A DNA stretch of 64,000 bases from Haliotis cracherodii. Its lineage: Eukaryota. The position numbers and the translations under genes were made by a program. The stretch's first letter is position 1. Each line of letters begins with the position of its first letter. The DNA is taken from assembly GCF_022045235.1 (NCBI RefSeq), contig NW_027266267.1, positions 35,154,001-35,218,000 of the forward strand, in the 5' to 3' direction. Under the pieces are notes generated by a model that had not been told where the DNA came from, did no database searches, and was given only the letters and a program-made list of their open reading frames with translations. This document shows, piece after piece, positions 4,096 to 51,600 of this stretch.

Positions 4096-6289
4096 GTTTC
4101 TCCTTAATCAAACTTCCTCTCGTCAATATTCGGTTGAAATAAGTTACTACACATGAAATACACACAGAGCAACATGCAGCATTCTTCGTGAACAAACATT
4201 AGAGCTCCGCTATCTGTGAAATACATCCTTATGAAGGAGGAAATATTCCTACAATCAGCATTCGCTCACCTGCAGCTGTTTGTCCTGGTTTAGGTACTGA
4301 TAAATACATACCTTTAGATATTTTACACAAAGTACAACTTGCATTACTGCCAGTTTGCGGTCGCGCACAGTTGTCGGTACATATACCAAAGGGATAATGT
4401 TTCATTGTCTATCCTGGCGTATTTGGATCATGTAATCACTTTGTTGGTGGGGGGTTTACATTCTTCGTGTGATGTTAATGAGAACATACTAGACACTGTC
4501 AATTCATGAATACGTTTTAAGCTGTTTCTCTTTGCAGCATATCCGGGCCACGTAGATGTTAATTTTCATTTTGCCGAGGCTTTGCATAAGCGTTGTTATA
4601 AGAATAGAGGTTTTTTTTCTGAGCACCTGAAAGATAAACAATCATTTGGGATGTTCACATTGAAATAACCACGTGTGTGATAATCATATTCCATGCTAGC
4701 ATGCAAGCATCCAAATTGTCTGCCCCGGATTAAACATGCACGTCCAAACTGTGAATCACGACCTTAAAGTCAAGGATGTCTCCATGCATATGCACTGTAA
4801 GATGTATTATTAGTTTTTTTTAAATTCAATACTTTTCTTTTTATTAAAATTTATTAACCACAGTTATATATGCATATTTCCTTATCTAGAATAGTCATAC
4901 AATATCATTGTCCCCGTCGTAAGTGCGCTGAGTCATTTTGCACCAATTTTCCAGGTCTGCACCTTGTGTTGTAATCAAAAATGCATCTTACCAAAAAACT
5001 GTCCCATTGTCGATACTCGCTTACACATTCTGGTGGGTAGGAGTTACATAAACACAATATAAATATAACTTTAATGTGTGTTTTTTTTCAGGTCGTAGTA
5101 TATATCATGTTGTGGTGAAAGTAGTAATCTAGTTGTATTATACTGCAATGCTTGATGGAACATGCATGAGACACGAATTAATTGAAAACAAAGCCAGTAA
5201 TCTGTCAGCCTATCAAGCCTTTATTTCTACAGGAAGAGGACAATAAACATTGAATAGATACTCAAATAAAGCCGAACGAGTACCTCACACAATGTAATAG
5301 ATAATGTGAATTCAGGACATTCAACTATTGAGTTTCAGTCATTCACGCTTTCCTGTTAGAGATTCAGTGAACATGATATTTACACAACATATTACGTGGA
5401 TACCCTTTGCGTAACTAATGATTCCAAAGGGACAAGTAACAGATATATTTGAAGTGACACAAACACGAAATATACATTACAGATGCTAGTAATCCCCAGC
5501 TAAAATAATCACATATGCATGCTATATACAGGTCCTAACAACTGTTCAGATGATAAGATGAAAATAGGTTATGACACAATTTAAAACGTCAACACCATGG
5601 AACTAGTGTCGAATATCTGCCGAAAGGCAAAATAATGATGACAACCGCATGAATGCATCACTGAAAATCAGTTGTGACACCAGGTTTTACGAAAAAGGGT
5701 AAGCTTGTCTTGTCTTTTACAGCGGTACCTCCTATGCACAATTTTCATAAAACATGGTGTTTGTTTTTGCAACACCCAGCAATAATCCTGCTATACGACG
5801 ATACATCAGTAGTGACAAAATGTTTTTATTATACCAATGGCGTAATGTCATTATGATAATAGCTTAACATATTGGCCGAAAATGACACAAACACTGGAGG
5901 ATGTATATATATTTGCTGGTCTGACAACTTGAAACAGTGGTTTTCACACTACTATGTTCTCATTGGTGGATTTTCGTAGTCAGCATTCTCGGTCACAGTG
6001 TTGTAGTAAACATCGTTGGCATTTATGCTGGACTGTCTGGAGGCTTCCTTCTTGATCTCGGAGTAACAGGGATCTGTATTGCCATCGTGAGCCAAAGTGT
6101 CGTATTGAGGTGCGTCAACCTCAGCCAGTGATACATCTGTACAAACACAGATACAAATAAGGAGTGTTGTAGACACGAGTCATGTTTTACGTTACACACT
6201 GACACAAGATGCTTCACAACAGTTTATTTGTGATACAAAGCTCCACAGCATTAATATTGTTTATTATTTGTATGGAGATGATCTGTCAT

Positions 6290-7015
6290 AACCAGCTGTC
6301 AGCCAATGTTTGGCTGCCCTACTTGAGGTCAGTATGTTAATTGAGGATGAAATCTCCCGAATCAAAGAATCAGTAACATCAACTTTTGACTTGGCTGTAA
6401 AACCTGAAGACATATCCATTCCTCTTTCTTATTGTCACAGAAAATATTTGAGACAAATGGAATTATTACCATGTAGATTCTCCAAAAAATAAATGATTTG
6501 CTTGACTTTGTTACAAACTCTGAAAAGAACCAACTTCAATTATGTCAAAACATTTGACTTTTCAACTTTGTACACCACAATACCATATGGGAAACTTGAA
6601 GGAAAACTTAATGCCTTGAATCATGGGGCTTGTTTAAAAACATGGTGACCATATATAGCGTTACTTATTTATCATCAGATCTAGAGGTTCAGGTCAGTTT
6701 GTCAAACATGGAAGCAAATGCCCAAAAAAGGGATGACTTCAACTTTGCAGTGCTCAACGTTCACTTTGTTTAGAACAGTGTTCCATCAGCAAGAGCCCTT
6801 GGTGTTTTTCATTTCACAACTTTTGAGGTATTGTGCTCTTTCTACCAAGATCTCAAAGAGCGTCACACAACTCTTGCTCCGAAACTGATTGATCAGGATC
6901 ACAGCATTTAAGGCACCAGTAAAGCTTTCACAAAGATTGATTGTAGACATGTGGTGGAGATGTGGAATCACTATATGTCGACAGTATTTTGACACATGTA
7001 TTAAAATCCATTCTT
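6290..7015 (+). mobile_element. Penelope-like RT fragment, internally deleted
   Basis: VKTFDFSTLYTTIP and RDDFNF segments; paralog of 17600-18855. Confidence 0.6.
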
Positions 7016-7133
7016 TAAATCAGTAACGGCAAACGGTACAAGTACGACCTACAAATCACATGATATTAAATCAGTTTCTGAATACAAATAATTGTAAAAT
7101 ATTGCTACCCTCCTTACAAGAGGTGTAGATTAC

Positions 7134-7241
7134 CTTGCTTGACTTTTCAATTTCGTCTCCTGTAAACACCTACACAGATAACGATTACGATGAGGATCAT
7201 GATGCCAAACCCTGTCCCAGCAGCGATGTACATGGTGTCAT
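7134..7241 (-). other. Duplicate TM exon (TM2) of copy B with early stop
   Basis: DDTMYIAAGTGFGIMILIVIVICVGVYRRRN*; AAG acceptor and GT donor retained. Confidence 0.7.
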
Positions 7242-10200
7242 CTTGAACATGAAACTTATACTGGGCTACTGGGTGTCTGGTCCATGCTTAATGGTGTTGA
7301 TCTTTTAAAACTATAATGTGAAAAGCGGATTATCTAGAAATATAGCCTGAATGCTTTATAACGCTGTCATGAATGTTCTGGTTTGATCTTCAAATCACTT
7401 AATATCAAATTAGAATCTGATACCAAATAGTTCAAATTTGTTCTGACCGTCATCAAAGAGGTGTAGTTTACCTTGCTTGACGTTTCCCTTTCTTCTCGTC
7501 CTTACAACACATACACAGATAACGATTATAATGAGGATGAAGATTCCTCCACCTGTCCCAGCAGCAATATCTTGAAGAGAATAGAAATACTGGACTAGTA
7601 AGTATACTGTCCTTGAACTTGGCACATGGATAAGTCTATATAAGTACATTTATGTGTTCGTATATATAAGCAATGAGTATAAGTGCTGAATGATATAAGA
7701 CAACATAACTTTTACATAAAGAGAGTCCATGCTGTATACACGCAGATAGAGTTGGTGACCTCGATCTATGAGGAGCAATGATACGAAGTTACTAGTATTT
7801 ACTTGTTTCACAACATAATTTAGTTTGATTGGGACGTTTTTGAAAGGGAAATGTGATATATATAAAGCACAGTAAAGTTCTAGTTCCCAGGCACAATATA
7901 GTAAAATTAGAATAAGTGGAGTAAGATTAAACACAGTTTGAATTGGCTAACTCTTTCAACTCGTACCACGTATGAGTCTCATGAGGCCATAACTGAATAA
8001 CGAACATGAAGTTATGTAACGCGTAACCGGAGAGATACGAGTAACCTTTTATGCAGGACTGTACACAACTAGGTTTTAGGTATACAAGGCAGAGATGGAG
8101 ATTATATATGAGTACTACATTCTTAAGTTTCTGAATATCAGTAACCTTTAATTGCCGTCATGGCCAAATGACATTAGAATTCAGCTGATCCAACTTTTCT
8201 TCGGGTATCCGATGATGTTAATAAGCACGTCGTTAGTAATGGGTGTATGGTCCATGTTTTTTTCCATGCCGCTTATCGTGGCGTGACGACAATATTGCTT
8301 ACTCTGTTATTTATAATAGTTCATTCGTTTACAATGACAAAGCTAAGTCAATATAAGAAGTTTAATAAAATGCCGCACCGAAATAATGGGGTTGATCTAT
8401 CACAATAGCATGTGAAAACCGTAATGTCTAGAGAGCTATCACAGTACTGTCTGTTCAAATGCCACTCAGTGCACATTGTTGGTATGTCTTGGATCCTGGG
8501 TCAGTATATGGTTTTGTTATATATTCATGAATGTTTCTAAATATCCTATATATCGTACCCAAAGGTTAGTATGACGACTAGTACACAACTACCTTGATTA
8601 TCGTTACTCGGGGCAGTAGATATCTTGATAGTTGTAAGATTTGCCAATGTTGTCAGCTGTGAACTTGTTTTATAAGTAGCCCCGTTAAAGCCTGACGACA
8701 TAAATAATATATACAAATAATTATGAAATTGGCTCGCTCACCACAGAGGACATAAAATAACACACTTCTATGGTTTGAATAATCCGATAGACGAGCCATA
8801 TCATGTTCAATTAATGTTTAGTGTGTCTAGGAACGCACGTTCGAACATTTTACATACAAAGTTACTAAATGTGTGGATAGCTGATACATATATTAGTTCA
8901 AATAAATGCATTGAATTATTAAAACAGATAAAATGGCTTTCGCCGGCATAAGTGTAAATGACACAACTTGTATCCATACAATGTTTCTCTAAATATATAA
9001 TACATCGTTAGTTTAACTGATACAAATCTACCATGAGTATTGCTGTCTGTGGGGATCGTTGTTGCTGAATCAGTCAGTGATGTAGTTGACTTATCAGTAG
9101 TCCCTGGAATGGCTGCATACATAAATAATATATATTATTTGTGACATTTATTAGCTTAATATCGATACACATTAACAAACGATTTCATATTGACCGCCTC
9201 CATGGTCAACTGGTTAGAGCGTTTGTCCAGAGATGGGAAGATCCGTGGGTTTGACACCAGGTCAGGTCATACGAAAAGTCGTAGTTTTCACCCTGTCCGG
9301 TATCAAGGGGAAAACACGTGGTGTTGTCTGTTTGGAGTAAGTCTACTGTGTCTGAATGAGGCATGCATGTTAAACTGCGCCACGGTATCTGAGTGGGCAG
9401 ACACTATGAAACGGGAATTGTATACGGAATAATACAAGCAACCACACACAAACACACACGCACTCAATCACTACACACATACACACACAAACACGTGCAT
9501 GTACGTCGCTATATAAGGCGAGTAATCATGGACGCGACGTAACAAATTTCACCTCTCTTCCGATAGTGTTAACACCGGTTGTATCTCTGGGTGACCGTTT
9601 TATAAAGTGCCTCATCTGTAGATGTCGTGTTCATAGTTCTTGAACATTTACGTATGGTTCTCAGGTATATATTTCATGAATCAGTTACATCTGCATTCGT
9701 TCTGGCACAATATGTCATAGCATGATGTATGGGATCAGAAAGGACACGTTGATGTAAATAAAGGAGTATGAGCGCATGACAAAAAGATCATACCCAACGT
9801 AATGTTGTTACTGACTCTATTGCGTTCATCCTCACACCGCCACACAGTCCCAGCTTTGATGTATTGAGTTGTAGTTAGTGTCATGTTGTGCTGGTGGTCA
9901 CCACAGCTTACACCGACATCATTTGATGTGAATAGGTCGTAACGATATGCAGAAGTATCGTCTGTACCATTGGGTGGGTTTCTGGTACAACCAGTAACTG
10001 CAAACACTGACGTGAGAACTCGCACCTCATCTAAATACCAATATGTGAAGGAACTGGTTTTTTTCCAGGTCGGAGTATATATCATGTTGTGGTGAAAGTA
10101 GTAATCTAGTTGTATTATACTGCAATGCTTAATGGAACATGCACGAGACACGAATTAATTGAAAACAAAGCCAGTAATCTGTCAGCCTATCAAGCCTTTA

Positions 10201-10984: not shown

Positions 10985-13900
10985 CTATGTTCTCATTGGT
11001 GGATTTTCGTAGTCAGCATTCTCGGTCACAGTGTTGTAGTAAACATCGTTTGCATTTATGCTGGACTGTCTGGAGGCTTCCTTCTTGATCTCGGAGTAAC
11101 AGGGATCTGTACTGCCATCGTTAGCCAAAGTGTCGTATTGAGGTGCGTCAACCTCAGCCAGTGATACATCTGTACAAACACAGATATAAATAAGGAGTGT
11201 TGTAGACACGAGTCATGTTTTACGTTACACACTGACACAAGATGCTTCACAACAGTTTATTTGTGATACAAAGCTCCTCAGCATTAATATTGTTTATTAT
11301 TTGTATGGAGATGATCTGTCATAACCAACTGTCAGCCAATGATTGGCTGCCCTACTTGAGGTCAGTATGTTAATTGAGGATGAAATCTCTCGCATCAAAG
11401 AATCAGTAACATCAACTTTTGACTTGGCTGTAAAACCTGAAGACATATCCATTTCTCTTTCTTATTTTCACAGAAAATATTTGAGACAAATAGAATTATT
11501 ACCATGTAGATTCTCCAAAAAATAAATGATTTGCTTGACTTTGTTAGAAACTCTGAAAAGAACCAACTTCAATTATGTCAAAACATTTGACTTTTCAACT
11601 TTGTACACCACAATACCATATGGGAAACTTGAAGGAAAACTTAATGCCTTGAATCATGGGGCTTGTTTAAAAACATGGTGACCATATATAGCGTTACTTA
11701 TTTATCATCAGAGGTTCAGGTCAATTTGTCAAACATGGAAGCAAATGCCCAAAATAGGGATGACTTCAACTTTGCAGTGCTCAACGTTCACTTTGTGTGG
11801 AGCAGTGTTCTATCAGCAAGAGCCCTTGGTGTCTTCATTTCACAATTTTTGAGGTATTGTGCTCTTTCTACCAAGATCTCAAAGAGCGTCACACAACTCT
11901 TGCTCCGAAGCTGATTGATCAGGATCACAGCATTTAAGGCACCAGTAAAGCTTTCACAAAGATTGATTGTAGACATGTGGTGGAGATGTGGAATCACTAT
12001 ATGTTGACAGTATTTTGACACATGTATTAAAATCCATTCTTTAAATCAGTAACGGTAAACGGTACAAGTACAACCTACAAATCACATGATATTAAATCAG
12101 TTTCTGAATACAAATAATTGTAAAATATTGCTACCCTCCTTACAAGAGATGTAGATTACCTTGCTTGACTTTTCAATTTCGTCTCCTCTAAACACCTAAA
12201 CTGGTGACCCCCGCCGTGATATTGCTGGAATATTGCTAAAAGCGGCGTAAAACCATACTCACTCACTCACTCACTCACTAAACACCTAAACAGATAACGA
12301 TTACGATGAGGATCATGATGCCAAACCCTGTCCCAGCAGCGATGTACATGGTGTCATCTTGAACATGAAACTTATACTGGGCTAGTGGGTGTCTGGTCCA
12401 TGCTTAATGGTGTTGATCTTTTAAAACTATAATGTGAAAAGCGGATTATCTAGAAATATAGCCTGAATGCTTTATAACGCTGTCATGAATGTTCTGGTTT
12501 GATCTTCAAATCACTTAATATCAAATTAGAATCTGATACCAAATAGTTCAAATTTGTTCTGACCGTCATCAAAGAGGTGTAGTTTACCTTGCTTGACGTT
12601 TCCCTTTCTTCTCGTCCTTACAACACATACACAGATAACGATTATAATGAGGATGAAGATTCCTCCACCTGTCCCAGCAGCAATATCTTGAAGAGAATAG
12701 AAATACTGGACTAGTAAGTATACTGTCCTTGAACTTGGCACATGGATAAGTCTATATAAGTACATTTATGTGTTCGTATATATAAGCAATGAGTATAAGT
12801 GCTGAATGATATAAGACAACATAACTTTTACATAAAGAGAGTCCATGCTGTATACACGCAGATAGAGTTGGTGACCTCGATCTATGAGGAGCAATGATAC
12901 GAAGTTACTAGTATTTACTTGTTTCACAACATAATTTAGTTTGATTGGGACGTTTTTGAAAGGGAAATGTGATATATATAAAGCACAGTAAAGTTCTAGT
13001 TCCCAGGCACAATATAGTAAAATTAGAATAAGTGGAGTAAGATTAAACACAGTTTGAATTGGCTAACGCTTTCAACTCGTACCACGTATGAGTCTCATGA
13101 GGCCATAACTGAATAACGAACATGAAGTTATGTAACGCGTAACCTGATAGATACGAGTAACCTTTTATGCAGGACTGTACAAAACTAGGTTTTAGGCATA
13201 CAAGGCAGAGATGGAGATTATATATGAGTACTACATTCTTAAGTTTCTGAATATCAGTAACCTTTAATTGCCAGCATGGCCAAATAACATTAGAATTCAG
13301 CTGATCCAACTTTTCTTCGGGTATCCGATGATGTTAATAAGCACGTCGTTAGTAATGGGTGTATGGTCCATGTTTTTTTCCGTGCCGCTTATCGTGGCGT
13401 GACGACAATATTGCTTACTCTGTTATTTATAATAGTTCATTCGTTTACAATGACAAAGCTAAGTCAATATAAGAAGTTTAATAAAATGCCGCACCGAAAT
13501 AATGGGGTTGATCTATCACAATAGCATGTGAAAACCGTAATGTCTAGAGAGCTATCACAGTACTGTCTGTTCAAATGCCACTCAGTGCACATTGTTGGTA
13601 TGTCTTGGATCCTGGGTCAGTATATGGTTTTGTTATATATTCATGAATGTTTCTAAATATCCTATATATCGTACCCAAAGGTTAGTATGACGACTAGTAC
13701 ACAACTACCTTGATTATCGTTACTCGGGGCGGTAGATATCTTGATAGTTGTAAGATTTGCCAATGTTGTCAGCTGTGAACTTGTTTTATAAGTAGCCCCG
13801 TTAAAGCCTGACGACATAAATAATATATACAAATAATTATGAAATTGGCTCGCTCACCACAGAGGACATAAAATAACACACTTCTATAGTTTGAATAATC

Positions 13901-15525
13901 CGATAGACGAGCCATATCATGTTCAATTAATGTTTAGTGTGTTTAGAAACGCACGTTCGAACATTTTACATACAAAGTTACTAAATGTGTGGATAGCTGA
14001 TTCATATATTAGGTCAAATAAATGCATTGAATTATTAAAACAGATAAAATGGCTTTCGCCGGCATTAGTGTAAATGACACAACTTGTATCCATACAATGT
14101 TTCTCTAAATATATAACATATCGTTAGTTTAACTGATACAAATCTACCATGAGTATTGCTGTCTGTGGGGATTGTTGTTGCTGAATCAGTCAGTGATGTA
14201 GTTGACTTATCAGTAGTCCCTGGAATGGCTGCATACATAAATAATATATATTATTTGTGACATTTATTAGCTTAATATTGATACACATTAACAAACGATT
14301 TTATATTGACCGCCTCCATGGTCAACTGGTTAGAGCGTTTGTCCAGAGATGGGAAGATCCGTGGGTTTGACACCAGGTCAGGTCATACGAAAAGTCGAAG
14401 TTTTCACCCTGTCCGGTATCAAGGGGAAAACACGTGGTGTTGTCTGTTGGGAGTAAGTCTACTGTGTCTGAATGAGGCATGCATGTTAAACTGCGCCACG
14501 GTATCTGAGTGGGCAGACTCTATGAAACGGGAATTGTATACGGAATAATACAAGCAACCACACACAAACACACACGCACTCAATCACTACACACATACAC
14601 ACACAAACACGTGCATGTACGTCGCTATATAAGGCGAGTAATCATGGACGCGACGTAACAAATTTCACCTCTCTTCCGATAGTGTTAACACCGGTTGTAT
14701 CTCTGGGTGACCGTTTTATAAAGTGCCTCATCTGTAGATGTCGTGTTCATAGTTCTTGAACATTTACGTATGGTTCTCAGGTATATATTTCATGAATCAG
14801 TTACATCTGCATTCGTTCTGGCACAATATGTCATAGCATGATGTATGGGATCAGAAAGGACACGTTGATGTAAATAAAGGAGTATGAGCGCATGACAAAA
14901 AGATCATACCCAACGTAATGTTGTTACTGACTCTATAGCGTTCATCCTCACACCGCCACACAGTCCCAGCTTTGATGTATTGAGTTGTAGTTAGTGTCAT
15001 GTTGTGCTGGTGGTCACCACAGCTTACACCGACATCATTTGATGTGAATAGGTCGTAACGATATGCAGAAGTATCGTCTGTACTATTGGGTGGGTTTCTG
15101 GTACAACCAGTAACTGCAAACACTGACGTGAGAACTCGCACCTCATCTAAATACCAATATGTGAAGGAACTGTTGGTGGTGGTGTTGATGGAGCTGCAGA
15201 CTAAGGTGACATTGTCGCCTGACTGGAACTGAGTGAGTTGTAGAGGGAGACCACCTGAAACATTCCAAGGTACAACCAGCATGAGAAGAAATCAGAACAC
15301 AAACATGCAGTGACATTCTCTGTCGTCCTCCATGTACTTACAATACCCAAATAGCTTTAACAAGCAAACATGAAACAGATTGGGTGCTACAGTCACTATT
15401 GAATTACACCTACGACATGTCATTGGCTCTACCCTTCGCGTGATTAGAAATTCAAACTTACTGTTATTTGTGTACGCAATCCATCCTATACACAGCAGAG
15501 TAATCAGGCGAATCCTGGTGCCCAT
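10985..15525 (-). CDS. Ig-like single-pass receptor, copy C, complete (~290 aa; tail type I)
   Basis: Leader 15525-15462, Ig 15254-14910, stalk1 14228-14148, stalk2 13807-13709, TM 12686-12588 (AAG acceptor), tail 11169-10985. Total 873 nt, all introns phase 1, no internal stop seen. Confidence 0.85.
11325..12045 (+). mobile_element. Penelope-like RT fragment, internally deleted
   Basis: Near-identical to 6290-7015. Confidence 0.6.
12160..12357 (-). other. Duplicate TM exon (TM2) of copy C, SINE-interrupted
   Basis: Paralog of 7134-7241 plus a 90-bp insertion; reads ..ICLGV*. Confidence 0.65.
12201..12277 (+). mobile_element. 5'-truncated SINE family 1 with TSD
   Basis: (CACT)n tail; TSD CTAAACACCTAAA at 12188-12200 and 12278-12290. 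Confidence 0.85.
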
Positions 15526-17267: not shown

Positions 17268-20200
17268 CTAAGTTATCATTTGTGGATTTTCGTAGTCAGC
17301 ATTCTCGGGCACAGTGTTGTAGTAAACATCGTTTGCATTTATGCTGGACTGTCTGGGGGCTTCCTTCTTGATCTCGGAGTAACAGTGATCTGTATTGCCA
17401 TTGTGAGCCAAAGTGTCGTATTGAGGTGCATCAATAACAGCCAGTGATACGTCTGTACAAACACAGATACAAATAAGGAGTGTTGTAGACACGAGTCATG
17501 TTTTACGTTACACACTGACACAAGATGCTTCACAACTGTTTATGATACAAAGCTCCTCAGCATTAATATTGTTTATTATTTGCATTGAGATGATCTGTCA
17601 GAACCAGCTGTCATCCAATGTTTGGATGCCCTAATTGAAAAGTTTGAGGTTGTTCCTACTGACAAGGCCTCAAATAACATAACCATTTTGTGTAAGCATC
17701 ACTACATGAAATGTTTGATCAAAGAATTTGGCATAAGTGACATGTCAAATAATGCCACATATGAGGTCAGTATGTTAACTGAGGATGAAATCTGCTGAAT
17801 CAATGAATCAGTAACATCAACTTTTGACTTGGCTGCACAACCTGAAGACATATCCGTTCCTCTTTTGTATTGGATTCCAAAGCTCCATAAAAATCAGTAC
17901 AGAGAGAGATATATTGCTGGGTTCAGCAAATATACCACAAAATCCCTGTCTCTACGATTAACCATAATCATTCATACAACCAAGAAAGAACTTTCTTATG
18001 TTCACAGAAAATATTTGAGACAAATGGAATTATTACAATGTGGATTCTCAGAAAAATTAATGATATGCTTGTCGTTTTTACCATCTCTGAAAGGAACCAA
18101 GTCCAATTCTGTCAAAACATTTGATTTTTCAACTTTGTACACCACAATACCATATGAGAAACTTGAGGGAAAACTTCATTGCCTTGATCCATGGGGCTTG
18201 TTTAAAAAAATGGTGACCAGATACAGCGTTACTTATCTATCATCAGAGGTTCAGGTCAGTTTGTCAAACATGGAAGCGAGACGTGAAGAATTCCGGGGTA
18301 GAATAGGTCTTCAGCAACCCATGCTTGCCGTAAAAGGTGACTATGCTTGTCGTAAAAGACGACTAACGGGATCGGGTGGTCAGGCTCGCCGACTTGGTTG
18401 ATGCATGTCATCGATCCCAATTGCGTGGATCGATGCTCATGATATAAATCACTGGATTGTCTGGTCCAGACTCGATTATTTTCAGACCGCCGTCATATAG
18501 CTGGAATTTTGCTGAGCACGACGTTAAACAACCAACCAACCAACCAACCAACCAAACATGGAAGCAAATGCCCAAAATAGGGATGACTTCAACTTTGCTG
18601 TGCTAAACGTTAACTTTGTGTGGAGCAGTGTTCCATCAGCAAGAGCCCTTGGTGTCTTCATTTCACAACTTTTGAGGTAAGTTGCTCTTTCTACCAAGAT
18701 CTCAAAGAGCGTCACACTGCTCTTGCTCCGAAGCTGATTGATCAGGGTCACATCATTTTAGGCACCAATAAAGCTTTCAAAAAGATTTGTGGTGGAGATG
18801 TGGAATCACTATATGTTGACAATATTATGACACATGTATTAAAATCCATTCTTTAAATCAGTAACGGCAAACGGTACAAGTACAACCTACAAATCAGATG
18901 ATATTAAATCAGTTTCTGATTATAAATAATTGAAAATATTGCTACCCTCCTTACAAGAGATGTAGATTACCTTCCTTGACTTTTCAATTTCGTCTGATCA
19001 CAACACCTACACAGATAACGATTACGATGAGGATCATGATGCCACCCCCTGTCCGAGCAGCGATGTACATGGTGTCATCTTGAACATAAAACGTATACTG
19101 GGCCACTGGGCGTCTGGCCCATGATCTTTGAAAACTATAATGTGAAAAGCTGATTATCTAGAAATATAGCCTGAATGCTTTATAAGCTGTCATGAATGAT
19201 CGGGTTTGATCTTCAAATCACTTAACATCAAATTCTAATCTGATACCAAATAATTCTAATTTGTTCTGACCGTCATCAAAGAGGTGTAGTTTACCTTGCG
19301 TGACGTTTCCCTTTCTTCTCGTCCTTACAACACATAAACAGATAACGATTATAATGAGGATGAAGATTCCTCCTCCTGTCCCAGCAGCGATATACGTGGT
19401 GTCATCTGGAAGAGAAAACAGATACTGGGCTAGTAAGTATACTGTCCGTGAGCTTGGCAGATGCATAAGTTTATATAAGTACATTTATGAGTTCGTATAT
19501 ATAAGCAATAAGTATATGTACTGAATAATCTAAGACAACATAAGTTTTACATGAAGAGAGTCCATGCTCTATACACGCAGATAAAGAAGGTGACCTCGGT
19601 CTTATGAGGAGCAATGATACGAAGTTACTAGTATTTACTTGATAATGTTTCACCATATAATTTAGTTTGATTGGGAAGTTTTCGAAGCACAGTAAAGATC
19701 TAGCCCCCAGGGGGGCGGTTGGGTAGCCTAGAGGTTAATGTGTTCGCTCGTCACGCCGAAGACCCGGGTTCGATTCCCGACATGGGTACAATGTGTGAAG
19801 CCCATTTCTGGTGTCCCCTACCGTGATATTGCTGGAATATTGCTAAAAGTGGCGTAAAACAATATACACTCACTCACTCTAGCTCTCAGGCACACAATAG
19901 TAAAATTGGAATAAGTGGAGTAAGATTAAACACAGTTGTAATTGGCTAGCGCTTTCAGCTCGTACAAAGATGAGTCTCATGAGGCCATAACTGAATACCG
20001 AACATAAAGTTGTGTAACGCGTAACCCAATAGATACGAGTAACCTTTAATGCAGAACCGTACAAAACTAGGTTTTAGGCATACTAAGCAGAGATGGAGTT
20101 TATATATGCCTACTACATTCTTAAGTTTCTGTATATCAGTAACCTTTAATTGCCATCATGGCCGACTCACACTTGAATTCAGCTGATCCAATTTTTCTTC

Positions 20201-22836: not shown

Positions 22837-22969
22837 NNNNNNNNNNNNNNNNNNNNNNNNNNNNNNNNNNNNNNNNNNNNNNNNNNNNNNNNNNNNNNNN
22901 NNNNNNNNNNNNNNNNNNNNNNNNNNNNNNNNNNNNNNNNNNNNNNNNNNNNNNNNNNNNNNNNNNNNN
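22837..22969. other. Assembly gap
   Basis: N run. Confidence 0.99.
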
Positions 22970-23278
22970 GTTCTTGAATATTATTATTGTTTTTGTTCTT
23001 TCCCTGTATTCAAAAGACTCAGTGTTAATTTTGCAGTGGCACATGCACAACCTTACTCAGAACATGATTTGTGAGATCAAAAGGACACGTTGATATTAAT
23101 GAAAGGAATATGGGCGCATGACAAAAAGATCAAAACCTGAAGTAAGGTTGTTACTGACTCTCCTGCGTTCATTCCCACACCGCCACACAGTCCCAACATG
23201 TGAGTACTGAGTTGTAGCTTGTGTAATGTTGTGTTGGAGGTCACCACAGCTTACACAGACATCCGTTGATGTGTATAG

Positions 23279-23444
23279 TGAGTGAGTGAGTATGGTTTTG
23301 CGCCGTGTTAGAGCAATATTCCAGCAATATCACGGCGGGAGACACCAGAAATGGGCTTCACATATTGTACCCATGTTGGGAATCGAACCCGGGTCTTCGG
23401 CGTGAGGAGCGAACGCTTTAACCACTAGGCTACCCGACCGCCCT
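23279..23444 (-). mobile_element. SINE family 1 inside Ig exon
   Basis: 14-bp TSD GTTGATGTGTATAG. Confidence 0.9.
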
Positions 23445-23568
23445 GTTGATGTGTATAGGTCGTAACTATATGCATAACTATCGTTTGTGCTGTTGGGTGG
23501 GTTCTTTGCACAGATATTCCCTGCAGACACTGACGTGAGAAGTCGGAAGTCATCCAGGTACCAATGTG

Positions 23569-23694
23569 AGTGAGTGAGTATGGTTTTACGCCGCTTTTAG
23601 CAATATTCCAGCAATATCACGGCGGGGGACACCAGAAAATGGGCTTCAACGTGACGAGCGAACGCTTTAACCACTAGGCTACCCGACCGCCCCT
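23569..23694 (-). mobile_element. SINE family 1, internally deleted, inside Ig exon
   Basis: 11-bp TSD GTACCAATGTG. Confidence 0.88.
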
Positions 23695-30537: not shown

Positions 30538-30538
30538 T

Positions 30539-31281: not shown

Positions 31282-31451
31282 NNNNNNNNNNNNNNNNNNN
31301 NNNNNNNNNNNNNNNNNNNNNNNNNNNNNNNNNNNNNNNNNNNNNNNNNNNNNNNNNNNNNNNNNNNNNNNNNNNNNNNNNNNNNNNNNNNNNNNNNNNN
31401 NNNNNNNNNNNNNNNNNNNNNNNNNNNNNNNNNNNNNNNNNNNNNNNNNNN
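31282..31451. other. Assembly gap
   Basis: N run. Confidence 0.99.
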
Positions 31452-36200: not shown

Positions 36201-38384
36201 TCCATGTTTTTTTCCGTGCCAATTATCGTGGCGTGACGACAATTTTGCTGACTCTGTTATTTATAATAATTCATTCGTTTACAATGGCAAAGCTAAGTCA
36301 ATATAAGACATTTAATAAAATGCCGCACCGAAATAATGGGGTTGATCTATCACAATATCATGTGAAAACTGCAATGTCTAGAGAGCTATCACAGTACTGT
36401 CTGTTTTAAATGTACATTCAGTGCACACTGTTGCTATGTCTTGCTATGTCCTGGGTCAGTATATGGTTTTGTTACATATTCATGAATGTTTCTAAATATC
36501 ATATATATCGTACCCAAAGGTTAGTATGACGACTAGTACACAACTACCTTGATTGTCGTTGCTCGGGGCAGAGGTTATCTTGATAGTTGTAAGATTTGCC
36601 AACGTTGTCAGCTGTGAACTTCTCTTATAAGTAGTTCCGTGAAAGCCTGACGACATAAATAATATATACAGATAATTATGAAATTTGCTCGCTCACCACA
36701 GAGGACATAAAATAACACACTTCTATAGTTTGAATATTCCGATAGACGAGCCACATCATGTTCAATTTAGTGTGTTTAGGAACGGGCGTTCGAACATTTT
36801 ACATACAAAGTTACTAAATTTGTGGATAGCTGAAACATGTATTAGGTTAATGACATACAGAGGATTATTAAAACAGATAACATGTCTTTCGCTGGCATTA
36901 GTGTAAATGACATCACTGGTATCAATACAATGATTCTCTAAATATATAATACATCGTCAGTTTCACTGATACAAATCTACCATGATTATCGCTGTCTGTG
37001 GTGATCGTTGTTGCTGAATCAGTCAGTGGTGTAGTTGACTTATCAGTAGTCCCAGGAATGACTGCATACATAAATAATAAATATTATTTGTGACATTTAC
37101 TAGCTTAATATCGATACACATGAACAAGCGATTTTATATTAACCGCCTCCATGGTCAACCGGTTAGAGCGTTTGTCCAGAGAGGGGAAGATCGGTGGCTT
37201 TGACACCAGGCCAGGTCATACGACAAGGCATAGTATTCTCCTTGGGGAAAAACACGGTTTTGTCTGTTCGGAGTTAGTCTACTGTTTCTGAATGGGGAAT
37301 GCATTTACACCGCACCACGCTATCTGAGGTATCACTATGAAACAGGCATGTGTACTGACCAATACAAGCAACCACACACACACACACGCACACACACACA
37401 CACGCACGCACGCACGGAAGCACGCACGCACACACACATGTACACACACACACTCACACACGTACATGTACGTCGCTATATAAGTGGAGTAATGATGGAC
37501 GCGACGTAACACATTTCACCTCACTCTCCGAAAGTGCTAATACCGTATGCATCTGTGGGTGACCGATTTATAAAGTGCTTAATTTGTAGATGGCGTGTTC
37601 ATAGTTCTTGAACATTTACGTATGGTTCCCAGGTATATATTTCATGAATCAGTTACATCTGCATTCGTTCTTGCACAATATGTTATAGTATGATGCATGG
37701 GATCAGAAAGGACACGCTGATATAAATAAAGGAGTATGAGCGCATAACAAAAAGATCATACCAAACGTAAGGTTGTTGCTGACTCTAAAGCGTTGATCCT
37801 CACATCGCCACACAGTGCCAGCATTGAGGTATTGAGTTGTAGTTAGTGTCATGTTGTGCTTGTAGTCACTACAGCTTACACTGACATTATTTGATGTGAA
37901 TAGGTCGTAACGATATGCAGGATTATTGGCTGTATAATTGGGTGGGTGTCTGGTACAACGATGACCTACAAACACTGACGTGAAAACTCGCTCCTCATCT
38001 AAATACCAATGTGTCAAGGACATGTTGATAGTGGTGTTGATGGCACTGCAGACTAAGGTGACATTATCGCCTGATTGGTACTGAGTGAGTTGTAGAGGGA
38101 GACCACCTGTAACATTCCAAGATACAACCACAATGAGGAGCAATCAGAACACAAACACGCAGTGGTATTTGTTGTCGTTCTTCATGTACTTACAATACCC
38201 AAATAACTGTAACACTCAAACATGAAACAGATAGGATATAAAGTGGTACAATCACTATTAAATTACACCTACGACATCCTAATGGTTCTACCCTTCGCAT
38301 GATTAGAAATTCAAACCTACTGTTATTTGTGTACGCAATCCATCCTATACACAGTAGTGTAATCAGGTGAATCCTGGTGTCCAT
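33268..38384 (-). CDS. Ig-like receptor copy F (tail type II, lacks the NPxY exon)
   Basis: Leader 38384-38321, Ig 38106-37762, stalk1 37061-36981, stalk2 36646-36548, TM 35372-35273 (100 nt, phase-2 end), 41-nt exon 34320-34280. Candidate YAVP-repeat exon 34088-33850 and terminal segment 33311-33268; distal splicing is uncertain. Confidence 0.7.
35676..35840 (+). mobile_element. SINE family 1
   Basis: A and B boxes, (CACT)n tail. Confidence 0.85.
37372..37461. repeat. Imperfect (CA)n/(CACG)n microsatellite
   Basis: Seen directly. Confidence 0.9.
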
Positions 38385-40993: not shown

Positions 40994-41027
40994 GGAAATT
41001 CCCCTGATTGTAATATTGGGATTCCCC
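40994..41027. promoter_or_regulatory. Paired NF-kB/Rel consensus sites
   Basis: GGAAATTCCC (reverse complement GGGAATTTCC) and GGGATTCCCC, same 24-bp offset. Confidence 0.5.
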
Positions 41028-43680: not shown

Positions 43681-44250
43681 TGAACAATATTGCGTTATAC
43701 CGAACAACACTGAAGAATGTTCATCAATAGTGGGTAACACTGAGTAATACTGAACAATACTGCGTTATACCGAACAAACTGAACAATGTTGATCAATAGT
43801 GGGTAACACTGAGTAATACTGAACAATACTGAGTTACACCGAACAGCACTGAACAATGTTGATCAATAGTGGGTAACACTGAGTAATACTGAACAATACT
43901 GCGTTATACCGAACAAACTGAACAATGTTGATCAATAGTGGGTAACACTGAGTAATACTGAACAATACTGAGTTACACCGAACAACACTGAACAATGTTG
44001 ATCAATAGTGGGTAACACTGAGTAATACTGAACAATACTGCGTTATACCGAACAACAATGAACAATGTTGATCAAGGTGGGTAACACTGATTAATACTGA
44101 ACAATACGGCGTTATACCGAACAATACTGAACGATGTTGATCAAAAGTGGGTAACACGGAGTAATACTGAACAATACTGAGTTATACCGAACAATAGTGA
44201 ACAATGTTGATCAATAGTGGGTAACACTGAGTAATACTGAACAATACTGA
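43681..44250. repeat. 70-bp minisatellite, ~8 copies
   Basis: Same unit as 28069-28638. Confidence 0.92.
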
Positions 44251-46158: not shown

Positions 46159-46190
<32 letters not shown>

Positions 46191-48660: not shown

Positions 48661-51600
48661 TTAGACTTCACTATACTCATTGTCGGCTTCGGACCAAGTA
48701 CTATCTGCAACAACCAATGCGTTTATGTCATCCACACATATTTCATCCAAATATCAACGTTGTCTTTCTGTCATAAATCCCTCAAGGGATGTTACATTTT
48801 GTAGGTAAGTTGTTTTACGCCTCAGTTAAATATTCCTGATGACATCCTTTAAATAGTCGAGTCTGGAGTAGACAAACCGACGGTTACTGTTATGGTAAAT
48901 GTTCCACATCGTTGGGCAAAGATGACACACTATGTACCAAGTTTGTTTGTTTGCTGTTTACGGTTTAACCGCGAATATTACAGCTTTTTGATGGGGTCTG
49001 TAAATCATCGATTATGGACCAGACAACACAGTGACTGATATCATGAGCATCTAAAACATTCGGATCCAATGACATGCATCGACCAAGTCACCGATTCTAA
49101 CCACCCGATGCCGTTAGTTGACTAATCAACCACGTCACCGAGCCAGACCAACCGACCCATTTAGAGCCTCTTACGACAAACATGGATAAGGAGACATATT
49201 CTAACTCCTAGTCCGGTCAATCGCACTTCCGTGTATACTTACATGTTCCGTTCTTTGTTTTTTCATGGACATGTCCGGTACGGCATACAGATCACCAATG
49301 TTCACAGCACTGCCTACAGCTGACTGGTGTTTGGGTGTCGTGCCCGGGACGCCGTACTTGTCACCATCATTGACAGCACAACGTACAGCTAGCTTGTGTT
49401 TGGGTGTCTTGTCTGGTACGGCATACAGATCACCAACGTCGACAGCGCCGCCAAGAGCAGGTATGTGTTCGGGTGTATTGTCTGGTACGGCAGTTGAATA
49501 TAGAATTATGGTGTTCATATTTCAACAAGTCACACCATATTATTCTCCCTAGATATTCTTCCTGAAATTATTAAGCTTAATTTAGAAGGCAACACTCAAA
49601 CTATAATCACAATACAATAGTCAGATATGTGATGAAGTGAAGAACACCACAACAGAAAAGACTTACAAGTGAAGAGCACCTTGTTGTCAACAGGTTCAAC
49701 TTGGTATCTGAAAAGAAATATCATATTGTTTTTAAGTTATTGCTCGTTTCAAACCTGGGAAAAATTTGCAGGAATAAGATTCAACATTTTCATGAATGAT
49801 ATTATTTTTTTTTCACATTTGAGGCGTTACCATTGATCTGTCAACTTGTGTCATCGTATCCCAAAAGGTGATGGGCGTTACCCACATTATCATTGGTTGG
49901 TTGGTGTGTTGTTTAACGCCACACTAAGCAATATATGACAAAGCTATATGACGGCGGTCTGTAAATAATTCAGTATGGACCAGACAAGCCAGTGCTGAAT
50001 ATCATCAGCATCGATCCGATCAATTGGGATCGATGATATGCACCAACCAAGCGTGACGATCCGATCCCGCTAGTCGCCTCTTACGACAAGCATGGCCGCC
50101 TTTACGCAGCATCAAGATCTAATGTGTCTATTTATAGTCCATTGTCCTCCAACAACATGCAACCAACGATCACGCTTATTAATACAATACAAATTTGAAA
50201 ATATTTTAGAACTACCTGCGGATACAAAAATGTGCGTTTTTAAAAAAAAAGAGTTGCATTATCATTATAAAAGAACAATTGTGAAGAAAATATTTGAACG
50301 ATGAACTACCCGTGATAAGGGTTGATGATGCGACCGTCGTTGTGTGTGTTAATTACATTAATGAATACATTTAAATGAAGGCGACAAGGTCACCCACATC
50401 TATGGAGAGTTTTGTGATGATAACAATTAATTAACGTATTATGTACTACATAAATGCGACAAAACCCTTTCCATATCTCCGCGAAAAACACAGTCGATTG
50501 TTCGATTCGGACTATATCATGAGCATGTGTTTATGAATCACTATTAAATAGTGATGATACCAGGTGTTCGCCCCATCAGCGACACCCGTCAAAAACACAT
50601 GCAAACACAAGTCAAATAATCACATGAAAAAAACCTACAAGTCTGAATAGGGACTGGAGCCTCAATGTTCCCAACGTGTCTACAGTGAACCTTTTTAAAG
50701 CTTTTCTGAGGCCAGGAATGTTTCCTCGAATGTTGTAACCTTGATCAAACAGCTTCTTAGCAAGTAATGTATTACGCTCTTTTTGAAATATTGATTGAAA
50801 GTGCATGCTCGAATGTTCTTCAAAAGTTGTGAAATGTAGACAGCAATAGCTGTACCTACTGGAATACTGCTTGACATAAAGGGAAAGTTGACTGTTGGAA
50901 AGTTGACGTCATCCCACTTGTCATGCAGTCTAGTGCTTTATCCCTCTGAATCTTTGTGCATAGTTCTACATAAGAAACAGACGAAGCGGTTTCATTTGTC
51001 TTCTTTATTTCTAGTTCAGGTGGGTAAATCAGTCTATTTGGTGGTTATTGAACGATTTCCGATACCTATGACAACAATATACCTATGACGACTCATACGG
51101 GCATTGAGGTGAGGTGAGGTGAGGTGAGGTGAGGTGAGGTGAGGTGAGGTGAGGTGAGGTGAAATCGGGTTTAACGTCCAAGATTTTTGCACTTACATAG
51201 CCACGCTCTACCACTAGACCACGGAGGCGGTCCCGGGCATTGAGCGATGAAATTCAAAGGTGGTATACAGTGGAAATACTTGACACTCTACTCACGTAAC
51301 ATAAAGTGGGTTTTCTGAGACCTCTGCACCATTGTCTGCATCGCTGATAGCTGTAAACAGACATGACGACCAATACCTTTGTTCATTTATCATATTTCTG
51401 TTATTATTACTCTTGTGATATGTGCATGTATATTCAAATAAGCTATTTTATCACAAGGAGGGGTAAGGAAATGATTTGACGGATGAGAGCTGTATGTTAT
51501 TAATTTTTATGAAACTGGTAGTTAATCTGTACATCTGAAATGTTTTATAACGCTGTCATGAATGTTCCAGTTTGATCTTCAAATCACTTAACATCAAATT

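What the first reader, a model, noticed from the sequence alone, without database searches (positions are those of the whole stretch)
5952..51350. Same ectodomain family coupled to two unrelated cytoplasmic tails
Seen: B, C and D end in a single 61-aa tail exon, whereas A, F and G continue into different small exons (SENPLYVT, YQVEPVDNKVLFT, then YAVP repeats). Established: paired receptor families use similar ectodomains with different signalling outputs. Inference: tail swapping gives two signalling classes for related ligands.
Basis: partly seen in the sequence, partly recalled or inferred. Interest (0 to 1): 0.8.

Follow-up and report, generated by a model that had tools for sequence, protein, structure and literature searches.

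The report
Abalone Ig receptors with two tails
This black-abalone window holds a tandem row of abalone-only cell-surface receptor genes whose antibody-like outer domain is joined to one of two unrelated tyrosine-rich inner tails, as in vertebrate paired immune receptors, but several copies are damaged and no signalling role has been shown.

Summary
The window is Haliotis cracherodii chromosome DNA. It carries, on the minus strand, six units (A, B, C, D, F, G) of a nine-gene cluster. Each unit has a signal peptide, one V-set Ig exon, two stalk exons and a TM exon.

- **Tail I:** B, C and D end in one 61-aa exon (YDTL-x9-YSEI, VYYNTV, YENP).
- **Transcript models:** RefSeq has full-length models of both classes in this genome (A = type II, C = type I) and in H. 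rufescens.
- **Shuffling:** trees and AU tests reject one origin per tail type. B, C and D keep a dead second TM exon as a scar of 3' module replacement.
- **Selection:** both tails show dN/dS of about 0.2-0.4. The Ig exon evolves as fast as or faster than its introns.

Caveats: B is 5'-truncated. D has a frameshifted stalk exon. G has lost a stalk acceptor. F has lost the NPxY exon. RefSeq joins F's ectodomain to D's type I tail. The motifs do not form a clean ITIM-versus-ITAM pair.

The scan already reported the same cluster in the adjacent window (s1-835414).

The parts
4032..4095 (-). A: signal-peptide exon
   Evidence: 100% to P0034 residues 1-22
3419..3760 (-). A: V-set Ig exon (342 nt)
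   Evidence: The assembly gap at 2895-3131 lies in the following intron; its flanks are collinear with F
2516..2596 (-). A: stalk exon 1
2077..2175 (-). A: stalk exon 2 (99 nt; 100% identical to that of C, a type I gene)
1018..1128 (-). A: TM exon (111 nt, phase 1-1)
652..706 (-). A: tail II exon 1 (AISDADSCAEVSENPLYVT). The remaining tail II exons lie before the window start
   Evidence: P0034
9795..10056 (-). B: 5'-truncated Ig exon. The duplication junction is at 10056/10057. There is no signal-peptide exon
7472..7570 (-). B: TM exon (99 nt, 12-nt shorter form shared with C and F)
7135..7245 (-). B: relic second TM exon (TM') with an in-frame TGA
5952..6136 (-). B: tail I exon (61 aa) plus stop
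   Evidence: P0005
15462..15525 (-). C: signal-peptide exon
   Evidence: P0033
14910..15254 (-). C: V-set Ig exon
14148..14228 (-). C: stalk exon 1
13709..13807 (-). C: stalk exon 2
12588..12686 (-). C: TM exon
12281..12361 (-). C: relic TM' exon, cut short by a (GTGA)n insertion
10985..11169 (-). C: tail I exon plus stop
22259..22322 (-). D: signal-peptide exon
   Evidence: 100% to P0001 residues 1-22
21757..22101 (-). D: V-set Ig exon
20991..21071 (-). D: stalk exon 1
20554..20644 (-). D: stalk exon 2 with an 8-nt deletion, giving a frameshift and a stop. Skipping this exon would keep the frame
19295..19405 (-). D: TM exon
   Evidence: used in RefSeq model P0007
18972..19082 (-). D: relic TM' exon (in-frame TGA). 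Positions 19000-19102 (its 5' part plus about 20 nt of upstream flank) are 95% identical to H's working TM exon and flank
17268..17452 (-). D: tail I exon plus stop
23141..24089 (-). E: broken Ig-exon fragments (stops, several frames). There is no TM or tail. The gap at 22837-22969 lies just downstream
38321..38384 (-). F: signal-peptide exon
37762..38106 (-). F: V-set Ig exon
36981..37061 (-). F: stalk exon 1
36548..36646 (-). F: stalk exon 2
35273..35372 (-). F: TM exon (100 nt). One extra base at the 3' end makes it end in phase 2
34280..34320 (-). F: YQVEPVDNKVLFT exon. It is in frame with F's TM exon because the 55-nt NPLY exon is deleted
33850..34088 (-). F: YAVP-repeat exon up to the GTAAGT donor
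33268..33311 (-). F: terminal STWSEADNEYSEI mini-exon plus stop. It is out of frame in F because of a +2 A-run in the previous exon
54513..54576 (-). G: signal-peptide exon
53967..54311 (-). G: V-set Ig exon (the sequence that was folded)
53565..53645 (-). G: stalk exon 1
53126..53224 (-). G: stalk exon 2. Its acceptor reads CTG instead of CAG. Skipping it stays in frame
51661..51771 (-). G: TM exon. RNA-like contigs cover exactly this exon
51296..51350 (-). G: tail II exon 1 (AISDADNGAEVSENPLYVT)
   Evidence: P0010
49667..49707 (-). G: tail II exon 2 (YQVEPVDNKVLFT)
49201..49481 (-). G: tail II exon 3, with 3.2 copies of a 69-nt YAVP/YGVP repeat. The GTAAGT donor is at 49242. If the exon is not spliced, the ORF stops at 49201-49203
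48661..48704 (-). G: terminal STWSEADNEYSEV mini-exon plus stop. It is out of frame in G as assembled

Best explanation
The window is part of a nine-gene, head-to-tail cluster (order along the genes' own minus-strand direction, from high to low coordinates: J, I, H, G, F, D, C, B, A) in Haliotis cracherodii. The family has been detected only in abalones. Each gene encodes a single-pass receptor made of a signal peptide, one V-set Ig-like domain with four cysteines, a Thr/Ser-rich stalk on two exons, and a TM exon. All internal exons up to and including the TM exon are phase 1-1, so whole 5' and 3' modules can be recombined without breaking the frame.

Two non-homologous 3' modules circulate in the cluster:
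- **Tail I** is one 61-aa exon with four invariant tyrosine motifs: YDTL-x9-YSEI (ITAM-like), VYYNTV (ITIM consensus) and YENP.
- **Tail II** has four exons. The first carries an NPLY motif. The second is the YQVEP exon. The third holds a variable number (3 to 8) of 23-aa repeats, most with a (D)LYAVPD (YxxP) site. The fourth is a terminal YSEI mini-exon.

What is shown: the exon anatomy; full-length gene models of both classes; incongruence between tail type and the ectodomain tree; the relic TM exon left by a 3' replacement in the B/C/D lineage; purifying selection on both tails; and fast evolution of the Ig exon.

What is inferred: unequal or illegitimate recombination in the TM-to-tail intron has repeatedly re-coupled related, diversifying ectodomains to two different phosphotyrosine docking platforms. 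The cell would then read related ligands through two different outputs. Tail I would recruit SH2 kinases and phosphatases of the Syk/SHP type plus Grb2. Tail II would recruit PTB-type and Crk/Nck/Abl-type adaptors, or drive endocytosis.

In this window only A (type II) and C (type I) are undamaged. F and G are probably still usable variants. B and D look broken.
For: - **Species and family:**. Only 20 representatives turn up among 1.84 billion proteins; the 11 whose source was looked up are all Haliotis, as are the named family members.
- **Exons, splice sites and phases:**
- **RefSeq models:** P0034 is copy A with tail II and maps at 100% on A's exons. P0033 is copy C with tail I. P0032, P0010 and P0031 show tail II chains in H. 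rufescens, and P0006 shows tail I there.
- **Census:** tail I occurs 5 times. Tail II occurs in 4 genes plus 1 distant paralogue. All lie in C4:35.15-35.27 Mb.
- **V-set fold:** the AF2 model has pLDDT 85.7. The top Foldseek hits are VH/VHH domains (prob 1.00, TM about 0.6). The C19-W33-C101 triad is invariant. The distant member P0021 passes the Pfam V-set cut-off.
- **Shuffling:** Ig clades {H,I,J} and {A,C,D,F,G} each mix the tail types (100/100 support). A (type II) groups with B and C (type I) in the stalk region (97/96). AU p values are 6e-6 and 0.02. The TM' relic region in D (19000-19102) is 95% identical to H's TM exon region. The units are mosaic.
- **Selection:** tail I dN/dS is 0.20-0.41 for I/J against B/C/D. 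Tail II dN/dS is 0.19-0.44. Ig dN/dS is 0.9-1.7 among the young copies, and the Ig exon is less conserved than its flanking introns.
- **Transcription:** RNA-like contigs have zero depth in the non-repeat intron bins and cover the TM, YQVEP and YAVP exons. One contig leaves the genome within 2 nt of the YAVP acceptor.
Against: - No read or contig was seen that joins an Ig exon of F or G to tail II. The read laying joints table was swamped by repeats. The runs are coded, only guessed to be RNA, and 1-10% different from the window.
- RefSeq joins F's signal peptide, Ig and stalk exons to D's TM exon and tail I (P0007).
- Defects: B is truncated. D's stalk exon 2 is frameshifted. G's stalk exon 2 acceptor is lost. 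F has lost NPLY. F and G share a +2 A-run that puts the YSEI exon out of frame.
- Ig dN/dS near 1 also fits relaxed constraint.
- Tail I holds both ITAM-like and ITIM motifs, so the two tails are not a clean activating/inhibitory pair.
- Paralogue P0008 keeps the tail II repeats with Phe for Tyr. That weakens a purely phosphotyrosine reading of tail II.
- All signalling partners are inferred from motif rules recalled from general knowledge.
Confidence: 0.6

Rival explanations
1. Birth-and-death debris. The cluster is a fast-turning-over array in which most copies in this window are dying duplicates. On this view, the two tails on similar ectodomains are a by-product of unequal crossing-over, and no functional pairing has been selected.
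For: - B lacks a signal peptide and half of the Ig exon.
- D has a frameshift.
- G has lost an acceptor site.
- F has lost an exon.
- The E fragments are dead.
- Ig dN/dS is about 1 among the young copies.
- RefSeq models are fragmentary (P0001, P0005, P0010, P0031).
Against: - Both tails keep every tyrosine motif, with dN/dS of 0.2-0.4, across old copies and across H. rufescens and H. rubra.
- A and C are intact and are modelled full length in RefSeq.
- F's exon loss is compensated in frame.
- The defects in D and G sit in a phase 1-1 exon that can be skipped.
- The Ig exon is more diverged than its own introns. That points to selection and not to plain decay.
Confidence: 0.2
2. Tail II is not a second signalling output. 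It would instead be a trafficking or scaffold tail, with NPxY acting as an endocytosis signal and the repeats acting as a spacer or as a binding site that does not depend on phosphotyrosine. The two classes would then differ in surface residence or uptake, not in signal sign.
For: - The NPLY motif sits close to the membrane.
- Paralogue P0008 conserves the GAVDVGDL-F-AVPDKTPEH repeats with no Tyr at all.
- The first repeat of copy A has lost its Tyr.
- Repeat number varies from 3 to 8.
Against: - In A, F, G, H and the H. rufescens orthologues, most repeats (all but one each in A and its H. rufescens orthologues) keep Tyr in an acidic (D/N)(L/M)YAVPD context. That context fits Abl-type substrate and YxxP SH2 sites (general knowledge; not tested here).
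- The terminal exon carries a YSEI motif like that of tail I.
- F has lost NPLY but keeps the rest of the tail in frame.
Confidence: 0.12
3. Complex-locus reading. Neighbouring units are transcribed together and ectodomain exons are spliced to downstream units' TM and tail exons, as in RefSeq model P0007 (F spliced to D). Tail choice would then be made by splicing across units and not fixed per gene.
For: - P0007 maps at 100% to F's signal-peptide and stalk exon 1, and at 100% to D's TM exon and tail I.
- All units share one strand and phase 1-1 exons.
- The D model P0001 ends after stalk exon 1.
Against: - P0007 is a predicted model. It can be explained by homology-guided chaining that avoids F's phase-shifted TM exon and D's frameshifted stalk exon.
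- It needs a 17-kb intron that skips nine good exons.
- A and C are modelled as self-contained genes.
Confidence: 0.08

Closest known systems
Vertebrate paired immune receptors, especially CEACAM1/CEACAM3 and the Xenopus Ceacam pairs (PMC5112662); also KIR, LILR/PIR, SIRP and Siglec
   Same: - Clustered single-pass IgSF genes.
- A V-type N-domain that evolves fast.
- Members with related ectodomains but different tyrosine-motif tails encoded on separate 3' exons.
- Recombination within the cluster.
   Different: - There is no sequence homology beyond the Ig fold.
- The two tails are not ITIM versus ITAM or adaptor-coupled. Tail I mixes an ITAM-like pair with an ITIM, and tail II is NPxY plus a YxxP repeat array.
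- No TM segment has a charged residue.
- Ectodomains are 75-82% identical (80-93% in the Xenopus Ceacam pairs).
- No exon-limited gene conversion keeps them alike.
- All genes share one orientation.
Invertebrate IgSF multigene receptor families with ITAM/ITIM-type tails: the Hydractinia Alr family (bioRxiv 10.1101/2022.03.04.482883), Botryllus allorecognition receptors (PMC12582321), and oyster CgIgIT2 (reviewed in PMC11999971)
   Same: Lineage-restricted, clustered, fast-evolving Ig-type receptors with tyrosine-motif tails in animals that lack adaptive immunity.
   Different: This is a different family, seen only in Haliotis. It has a single Ig domain, and its tail II is built from a minisatellite. 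I took only titles, abstracts and one review passage from those papers. I did not compare sequences with them.
YxxP substrate-domain arrays of docking proteins such as p130Cas (recalled from general knowledge)
   Same: Tandem acidic-Y-x-x-P sites in a disordered stretch. Copy number sets the number of docking sites.
   Different: Here the array sits on the receptor's own tail and is built of 23-aa repeats. It has no Cas homology; none was detected or tested.
The same cluster's next window and other abalone receptor clusters already noted by this scan (s1-835414, s1-826198, s1-834033)
   Same: An abalone-only Ig receptor family with interchangeable tyrosine tails.
   Different: This window adds:
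- the A to G units and their defects;
- the TM' relic;
- the F deletion and its frame compensation;
- the terminal YSEI exon;
- the chimeric RefSeq model.

Membership tests
Immunoglobulin superfamily, V-set domain | Beta-sandwich of V-type topology | tested here: met
   The AF2 model of G's Ig exon has pLDDT 85.7 and pTM 0.82. Foldseek against the PDB gives 157 hits at E<=1e-3. The top hits are VH/VHH domains, with prob 1.00 and TM 0.59-0.64.
Immunoglobulin superfamily, V-set domain | B-strand Cys, C-strand Trp, F-strand (Y/W)xC triad | tested here: met
   C19, W33 and C101 (in VWRC) are invariant in 8 cluster copies. W33 and C101 are invariant, and C19 nearly so, in the 20-sequence alignment. 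A second Cys pair (C50, C78) is also conserved.
Immunoglobulin superfamily, V-set domain | Score above Pfam's gathering cut-off | tested here: inconclusive
   The window's exons fall below the cut-off (Ig_3 scores 14.1 bits against 30). The distant family member P0021 passes V-set (29.7 against 26) and Ig_3 (30.2 against 30). P0021 matches the family profile at E = 6.5e-5.
Paired activating/inhibitory receptors | Members with different tails are encoded in one gene cluster | tested here: met
   Nine units lie within about 90 kb, five type I and four type II, interleaved.
Paired activating/inhibitory receptors | Very similar ligand-binding domains across the two classes (80-93% aa in Xenopus Ceacam pairs, PMC5112662) | tested here: inconclusive
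   Ig exons are 75-82% identical in protein and 87-90% in DNA between type I and type II copies of the young clade. This is at or below the usual range.
Paired activating/inhibitory receptors | Opposing motifs: ITIM on one member; ITAM, or a charged TM residue for an ITAM adaptor, on the other | tested here: not met
   Tail I carries both an ITAM-like pair and an ITIM. Tail II carries NPxY, YxxP and YSEI. The TM sequence (IAAGTGGGIFILIIIVICVCVV) has no charged residue.
Paired activating/inhibitory receptors | Similarity of the binding exon kept up by exon-limited gene conversion | tested here: not met
   Ig-exon identity (87-90%) is equal to or lower than that of the flanking introns in every pair. 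Conversion-like tracts are seen in the stalk and introns instead.
Paired activating/inhibitory receptors | Opposite signalling outputs on ligand binding | not testable with these tools
   This needs cell assays.
ITIM | (S/I/V/L)-x-Y-x-x-(I/V/L) | tested here: met
   VYYNTV is invariant in B, C, D, I and J, and in P0006 and P0011. P0021 has AYYNTV.
ITAM | YxxL/I, then 6-8 residues (up to 12 in loose definitions), then YxxL/I | tested here: inconclusive
   YDTL-x9-YSEI. The 9-residue spacing is kept in H. rubra P0011 and in the distant P0021. It lies outside the strict 6-8 rule and inside the loose one.
NPxY (PTB-binding or endocytic) motif | N-P-x-Y in the cytoplasmic tail | tested here: met
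   SENPLYV is present in A, G and H, and in P0010, P0031 and P0032. It is deleted in F.
YxxP SH2-docking array | Repeated Y-x-x-P sites | tested here: met
   The 69-nt period repeat has 3.2 copies in G and 8.2 in H. Sites read YAVP, YGVP, YAIP or YAAP. Binding itself is not testable here.

The most novel reading that the evidence does not exclude
Abalones evolved, independently of vertebrates, a true paired-receptor system. Fast-diversifying V-type ectodomains would be re-coupled by exon-module recombination to two opposing or qualitatively different outputs: an ITAM/ITIM-type tail, and a Crk/Abl-type YxxP docking array whose minisatellite copy number (3 to 8) tunes signal strength. The system would be used against pathogens, or for self or gamete recognition.
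Probability: 0.15. Interest if true: 0.75.

Novelty: new variant of a known kind. Interest (0 to 1): 0.45.

Why it matters
If both classes are expressed and signal differently, this would be a molluscan case of the paired-receptor logic, reached by convergence. Paired receptors have so far been worked out mainly in vertebrates. This case would also keep an unusually clear genomic record of how tails get swapped: phase 1-1 exons, a dead duplicated TM exon, and a compensated exon loss.

It would also give black abalone, an endangered species hit by withering syndrome, a candidate family of variable recognition receptors. A receptor tail built from a copy-number-variable YxxP minisatellite is itself an unusual design.

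As things stand, this is a well-documented gene-family architecture with untested function. Its members are already present as 'uncharacterized protein' entries in RefSeq.

Tried and rejected
I mapped the models with tblastn instead.
- **RNA evidence.** The one run search found only small, coded runs that are guessed to be RNA. The one read-laying run on G (48900-54700) gave exon-limited contigs. Its joints table was filled by repeat-derived joints, so no TM-to-NPLY or Ig-to-tail joint could be read. The range also stopped 200 nt short of the YSEI mini-exon, which I found only later.
- **Pfam** on the window's own exons gave nothing above the cut-off. The gerPA and TMEM154 hits on the tails are sub-threshold noise.
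- **BLASTP** of tail I against a whole type II protein found no similarity.
- **Exon-limited gene conversion** of the Ig exon was looked for and not found.
- **Cryptic acceptors** for G's stalk exon 2: the two internal AGs are out of phase, so I rejected them (sequence).
- **Literature searches** for abalone or mollusc Ig receptors with ITIM/ITAM tails found nothing on this family.
- **tRNA/SINE scan and Pfam** on the ORF at 17829-18401 found nothing.
- **Joined sequences.** Frames were checked by exon-length arithmetic only.
- **Assembly gaps** were not filled or looked up.

Full report
**What the window is.** Word-based protein searches with the large minus-strand ORFs returned only Haliotis proteins. 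P0001 (XP_071095267.1, H. cracherodii) matches copy D's signal-peptide and stalk exon 1 at 100%. The window is G000:C4:35154001-35218000 of the black abalone assembly. All genes discussed lie on the minus strand. A self-comparison shows tandem units of 5 to 16 kb at 85-99% identity.

**Gaps first.**
- The gap at 31282-31451 is intergenic. Its left flank matches 46486-46885 and its right flank matches 46936-47167 of the paralogous F-G junction, both at about 98%. The two sides are therefore collinear, and about 50 nt separate them in the sister unit.
- The gap at 22837-22969 lies upstream of D's signal-peptide exon, inside a dead unit 'E' whose Ig fragments (23141-24089) carry stops and frame changes. 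Its flanks are collinear with H/I/J-type units, and it could hide E's stalk exon.
- A third gap, at 2895-3131, sits in A's Ig-to-stalk intron and is collinear with F.
- No exon of any model touches a gap. I did not try to learn what the gaps hide.

**Anatomy.** Exon boundaries were fixed using returned RefSeq proteins as guides, together with alignments of all copies. Every unit has these exons:

| Exon | Length | Phase |
|---|---|---|
| Signal peptide | 64 nt | ends in phase 1 |
| Ig | 345 nt | 1-1 |
| Stalk 1 | 81 nt | 1-1 |
| Stalk 2 | 99 nt | 1-1 |
| TM | 111 or 99 nt | 1-1 |

- B, C and D then have a second, dead TM exon (TM') with an in-frame TGA, or a microsatellite insertion in C. About 1.5 kb further on comes a 182-nt exon for 61 aa (DVSLAEVDAPQYDTLAH.GNTDPCYSEIKKEA.RQSSINANDVYYNTV.ENADYENP.M.T).
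- A and G continue from the TM exon into a 55-nt exon (AISDAD..AEVSENPLYVT) and a 41-nt exon (YQVEPVDNKV.F.). Next comes an exon that starts at a conserved CCAG|AC acceptor and holds 69-nt repeats, each encoding ..GAV.(V/I/D)GD(L/M/K)Y(A/G)VPDKTPKH.. (TRF: 3.2 copies in G and 8.2 in H).
It is reached from a GTAAGT donor at the end of the repeat exon. It is present in A, F and G and is used in three RefSeq models.
- F has lost about 1 kb that contained the NPLY exon. One extra base at the end of its TM exon brings the YQVEP exon back into frame, because 55 nt is 1 mod 3.

**Transcript-level support.** The listing of cluster members uncovered models hidden by 90% clustering.
- P0034 (XP_071095265.1, 380 aa) is copy A from signal peptide to YSEI. 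Its signal-peptide, stalk 1, TM, YAVP and YSEI exons align at 100% to A.
- P0033 (XP_071095266.1, 294 aa) is copy C with tail I.
- In H. rufescens, P0032 (357 aa) is a full type II protein and P0006 (293 aa) a full type I protein, with A-like Ig domains. P0010 and P0031 are partial type II models.
- These are predictions, but they are independent of my exon calls.
- The only reads tool call laid contigs of four coded runs on G. Every non-repeat intron bin had zero depth. Contigs covered exactly the TM exon (51661-51771), the YQVEP bin, and the YAVP exon together with its 3' flank (48900-49339 in one piece, so unspliced 3' ends exist). One contig stops matching the genome at 49483, 2 nt from the predicted acceptor at 49481.
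- The contigs differ from the window by 1-10%, and all lack 2 nt in the A-run at 49258. They may therefore come from a relative or a sister copy. No Ig-to-tail joint was visible.
- Against the claim for F: RefSeq model P0007 (XP_071095268.1) joins F's signal peptide, Ig and stalk exons to D's TM exon and tail I across about 17 kb. Homology-guided chaining around F's phase-shifted TM exon and D's broken stalk exon could produce such a model, but I cannot exclude that it is real.

**Census and family.**
- In the whole genome the tail I exon occurs five times (B, C, D, plus I and J just beyond the window).
- The tail II repeat exon occurs in A, F, G and H, plus a distant plus-strand paralogue.
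- Ig exons of this subfamily number nine in the cluster, with weaker relatives elsewhere on C4 and C18.
- A profile of eight Ig exons found only 20 representatives among 1.84 billion proteins. The 11 whose source I looked up are all Haliotis.
- The relatives carry yet other tyrosine tails, such as a YMxLKP array in P0024 and a DYNPSLL array in P0025. Tail I-like tails, with the same four motifs and the same 9-residue spacing, occur in H. rubra (P0011, P0021).
- The ectodomain folds confidently as a V-set Ig domain. The C-W-C triad is invariant and there is an extra Cys pair.

**Was the tail swapped?**
- The Ig-region tree has two 100/100 clades, {H,I,J} and {A,C,D,F,G}, each containing both tail types. 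Holding type II together costs 121 lnL units (AU p = 6e-6).
- In the stalk region, A (type II) groups with B and C (type I) at 97/96 support (AU p = 0.02). A and C share an identical stalk exon 2, while A's neighbouring intron and stalk exon 1 are F-like, so the units are mosaics.
- Homology between type I and type II units ends 126 nt after the TM exon.
- In B, C and D the next element is TM'. In D, positions 19000-19102 (the 5' part of TM' plus a short upstream flank) are 95% identical to H's working TM exon region. Their tail I exon is 84-86% identical to those of I and J.
- The simplest reading is an illegitimate junction that grafted the 3' part of another family member, from just upstream of its TM exon onward, onto an A/G-type gene. 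The extra TM exon was later inactivated. Ectodomain gene conversion could give the same trees, but it would not leave TM'.

**Selection.**
- Tail I: dN/dS is 0.20-0.41 between I/J and B/C/D, with all Tyr motifs invariant.
- Tail II repeats: dN/dS is 0.19-0.44 between F/G and A/H.
- Ig exon: dN/dS is 0.9-1.7 among A, C, D and F. Its DNA identity (87-90%) is equal to or lower than that of its own introns (up to 96%). This fits diversifying selection better than homogenisation, but relaxed constraint is not excluded.

**State of the copies.**
- Clean: A (type II) and C (type I).
- Altered but in frame: F has no NPxY. G's stalk exon 2 acceptor reads CTG; skipping that phase 1-1 exon keeps the frame.
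- F and G share two extra A's at 49258 and 33865. These change the C-terminus and put the YSEI exon out of frame.
- Broken: B has no signal peptide and half an Ig exon. D has an 8-nt deletion in stalk exon 2, which is rescuable only by exon skipping.

**Function.** Everything beyond motif presence is inference from general knowledge of SH2 and PTB specificities.
- Tail I combines an ITAM-like pair (9-residue spacer), a consensus ITIM and a YxN site.
- Tail II combines NPxY, several acidic LYAVP sites and a terminal YSEI.
- The two tails share no detectable similarity, apart from the short D-x-x-YSEI motif.
- The TM has no charged residue, so adaptor coupling of the DAP12/FcRgamma kind is unlikely.
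- Paralogue P0008 keeps the tail II repeat with Phe at every Tyr position. That is either a natural signalling-dead version or a warning that the repeat does something else.

**Comparison and novelty.**
- The layout works like vertebrate paired receptors, closest to the CEACAM1/CEACAM3 type in which both partners have their own long tails (PMC5112662). It fails two tested defining features: opposing ITIM-versus-ITAM motifs, and exon-limited conservation of the binding domain. I therefore do not file it as a paired-receptor family in the strict sense.
- Clustered Ig receptors with tyrosine tails are also known in Hydractinia, Botryllus and oysters (PMC11999971).
- I found no paper on this abalone family. 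Its members are 'uncharacterized protein' entries in RefSeq.
- The scan's own notes describe the same cluster in the next window (s1-835414) and similar abalone-only Ig clusters elsewhere (s1-826198, s1-834033).

**Limits.**

Noticed in passing
window 49258 (G) and about 33865 (F): The A-run is 2 nt longer in F and G than in A, H and the H. rufescens models. All contigs of four runs lack these 2 nt. The difference switches the C-terminus from ..MSMKTKNGT(C KYTRKCD* or, if spliced, YSTWSEADNEYSEI*) to ..MSMKKQRTEH.. This could be a shared mutation of the F/G duplicate or a homopolymer error in the assembly.
   Followed up: partly
window 12741-12752 and 7625-7636: RefSeq models of B and C (P0005, P0033) contain 'DLSMY' before the TM segment. 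This can only come from a 12-nt micro-exon (ACTTATCCATGT) with a non-canonical GC donor. It may be an annotation device to restore the 12 nt that B, C and F lack in the TM exon.
   Followed up: partly
window 28066-28638, 43680-44250, 59799-60501: A roughly 70-nt minisatellite of about 8-10 copies lies in the shared 8-9 kb region upstream of D, F and G.
   Followed up: no
window 38767-39176 and 54964-55376: Dead Ig-exon fragments (2 TGA stops each) lie just upstream of F's and G's signal-peptide exons, parallel to fragment E upstream of D. They are remnants of an H/I/J-type unit that was duplicated along with each large unit.
   Followed up: partly
window 17829-18401 (+): A 190-aa ORF that I judged by eye to look like a reverse-transcriptase fragment lies in D's TM'-to-tail I intron. 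It is absent from B and C at that place and has no Pfam hit. It is probably a decayed retroelement insertion.
   Followed up: partly
window 51105-51162 and about 400-480: A (CCTCA)n/(TGAGG)n microsatellite lies in the NPLY-to-YQVEP intron of G and A. It caused read skipping in read laying.
   Followed up: no
G000:C4:35258342-35270447 (+), outside the window: Paralogue P0008/P0009 (XP_071095272.1) has a type II-like tail in which every Tyr is replaced (DLFAVPD repeats, NQVQP, no NPLY). Isoform X2 reads the repeats in another frame.
   Followed up: partly
L002:873-1601 (window 64873-65601): Gene H has 8.2 copies of the 69-nt YAVP repeat, with a 207-nt super-period. It uses the TM type that survives only as a relic in B, C and D. 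Its YQVEP-exon Tyr is Asn.
   Followed up: partly
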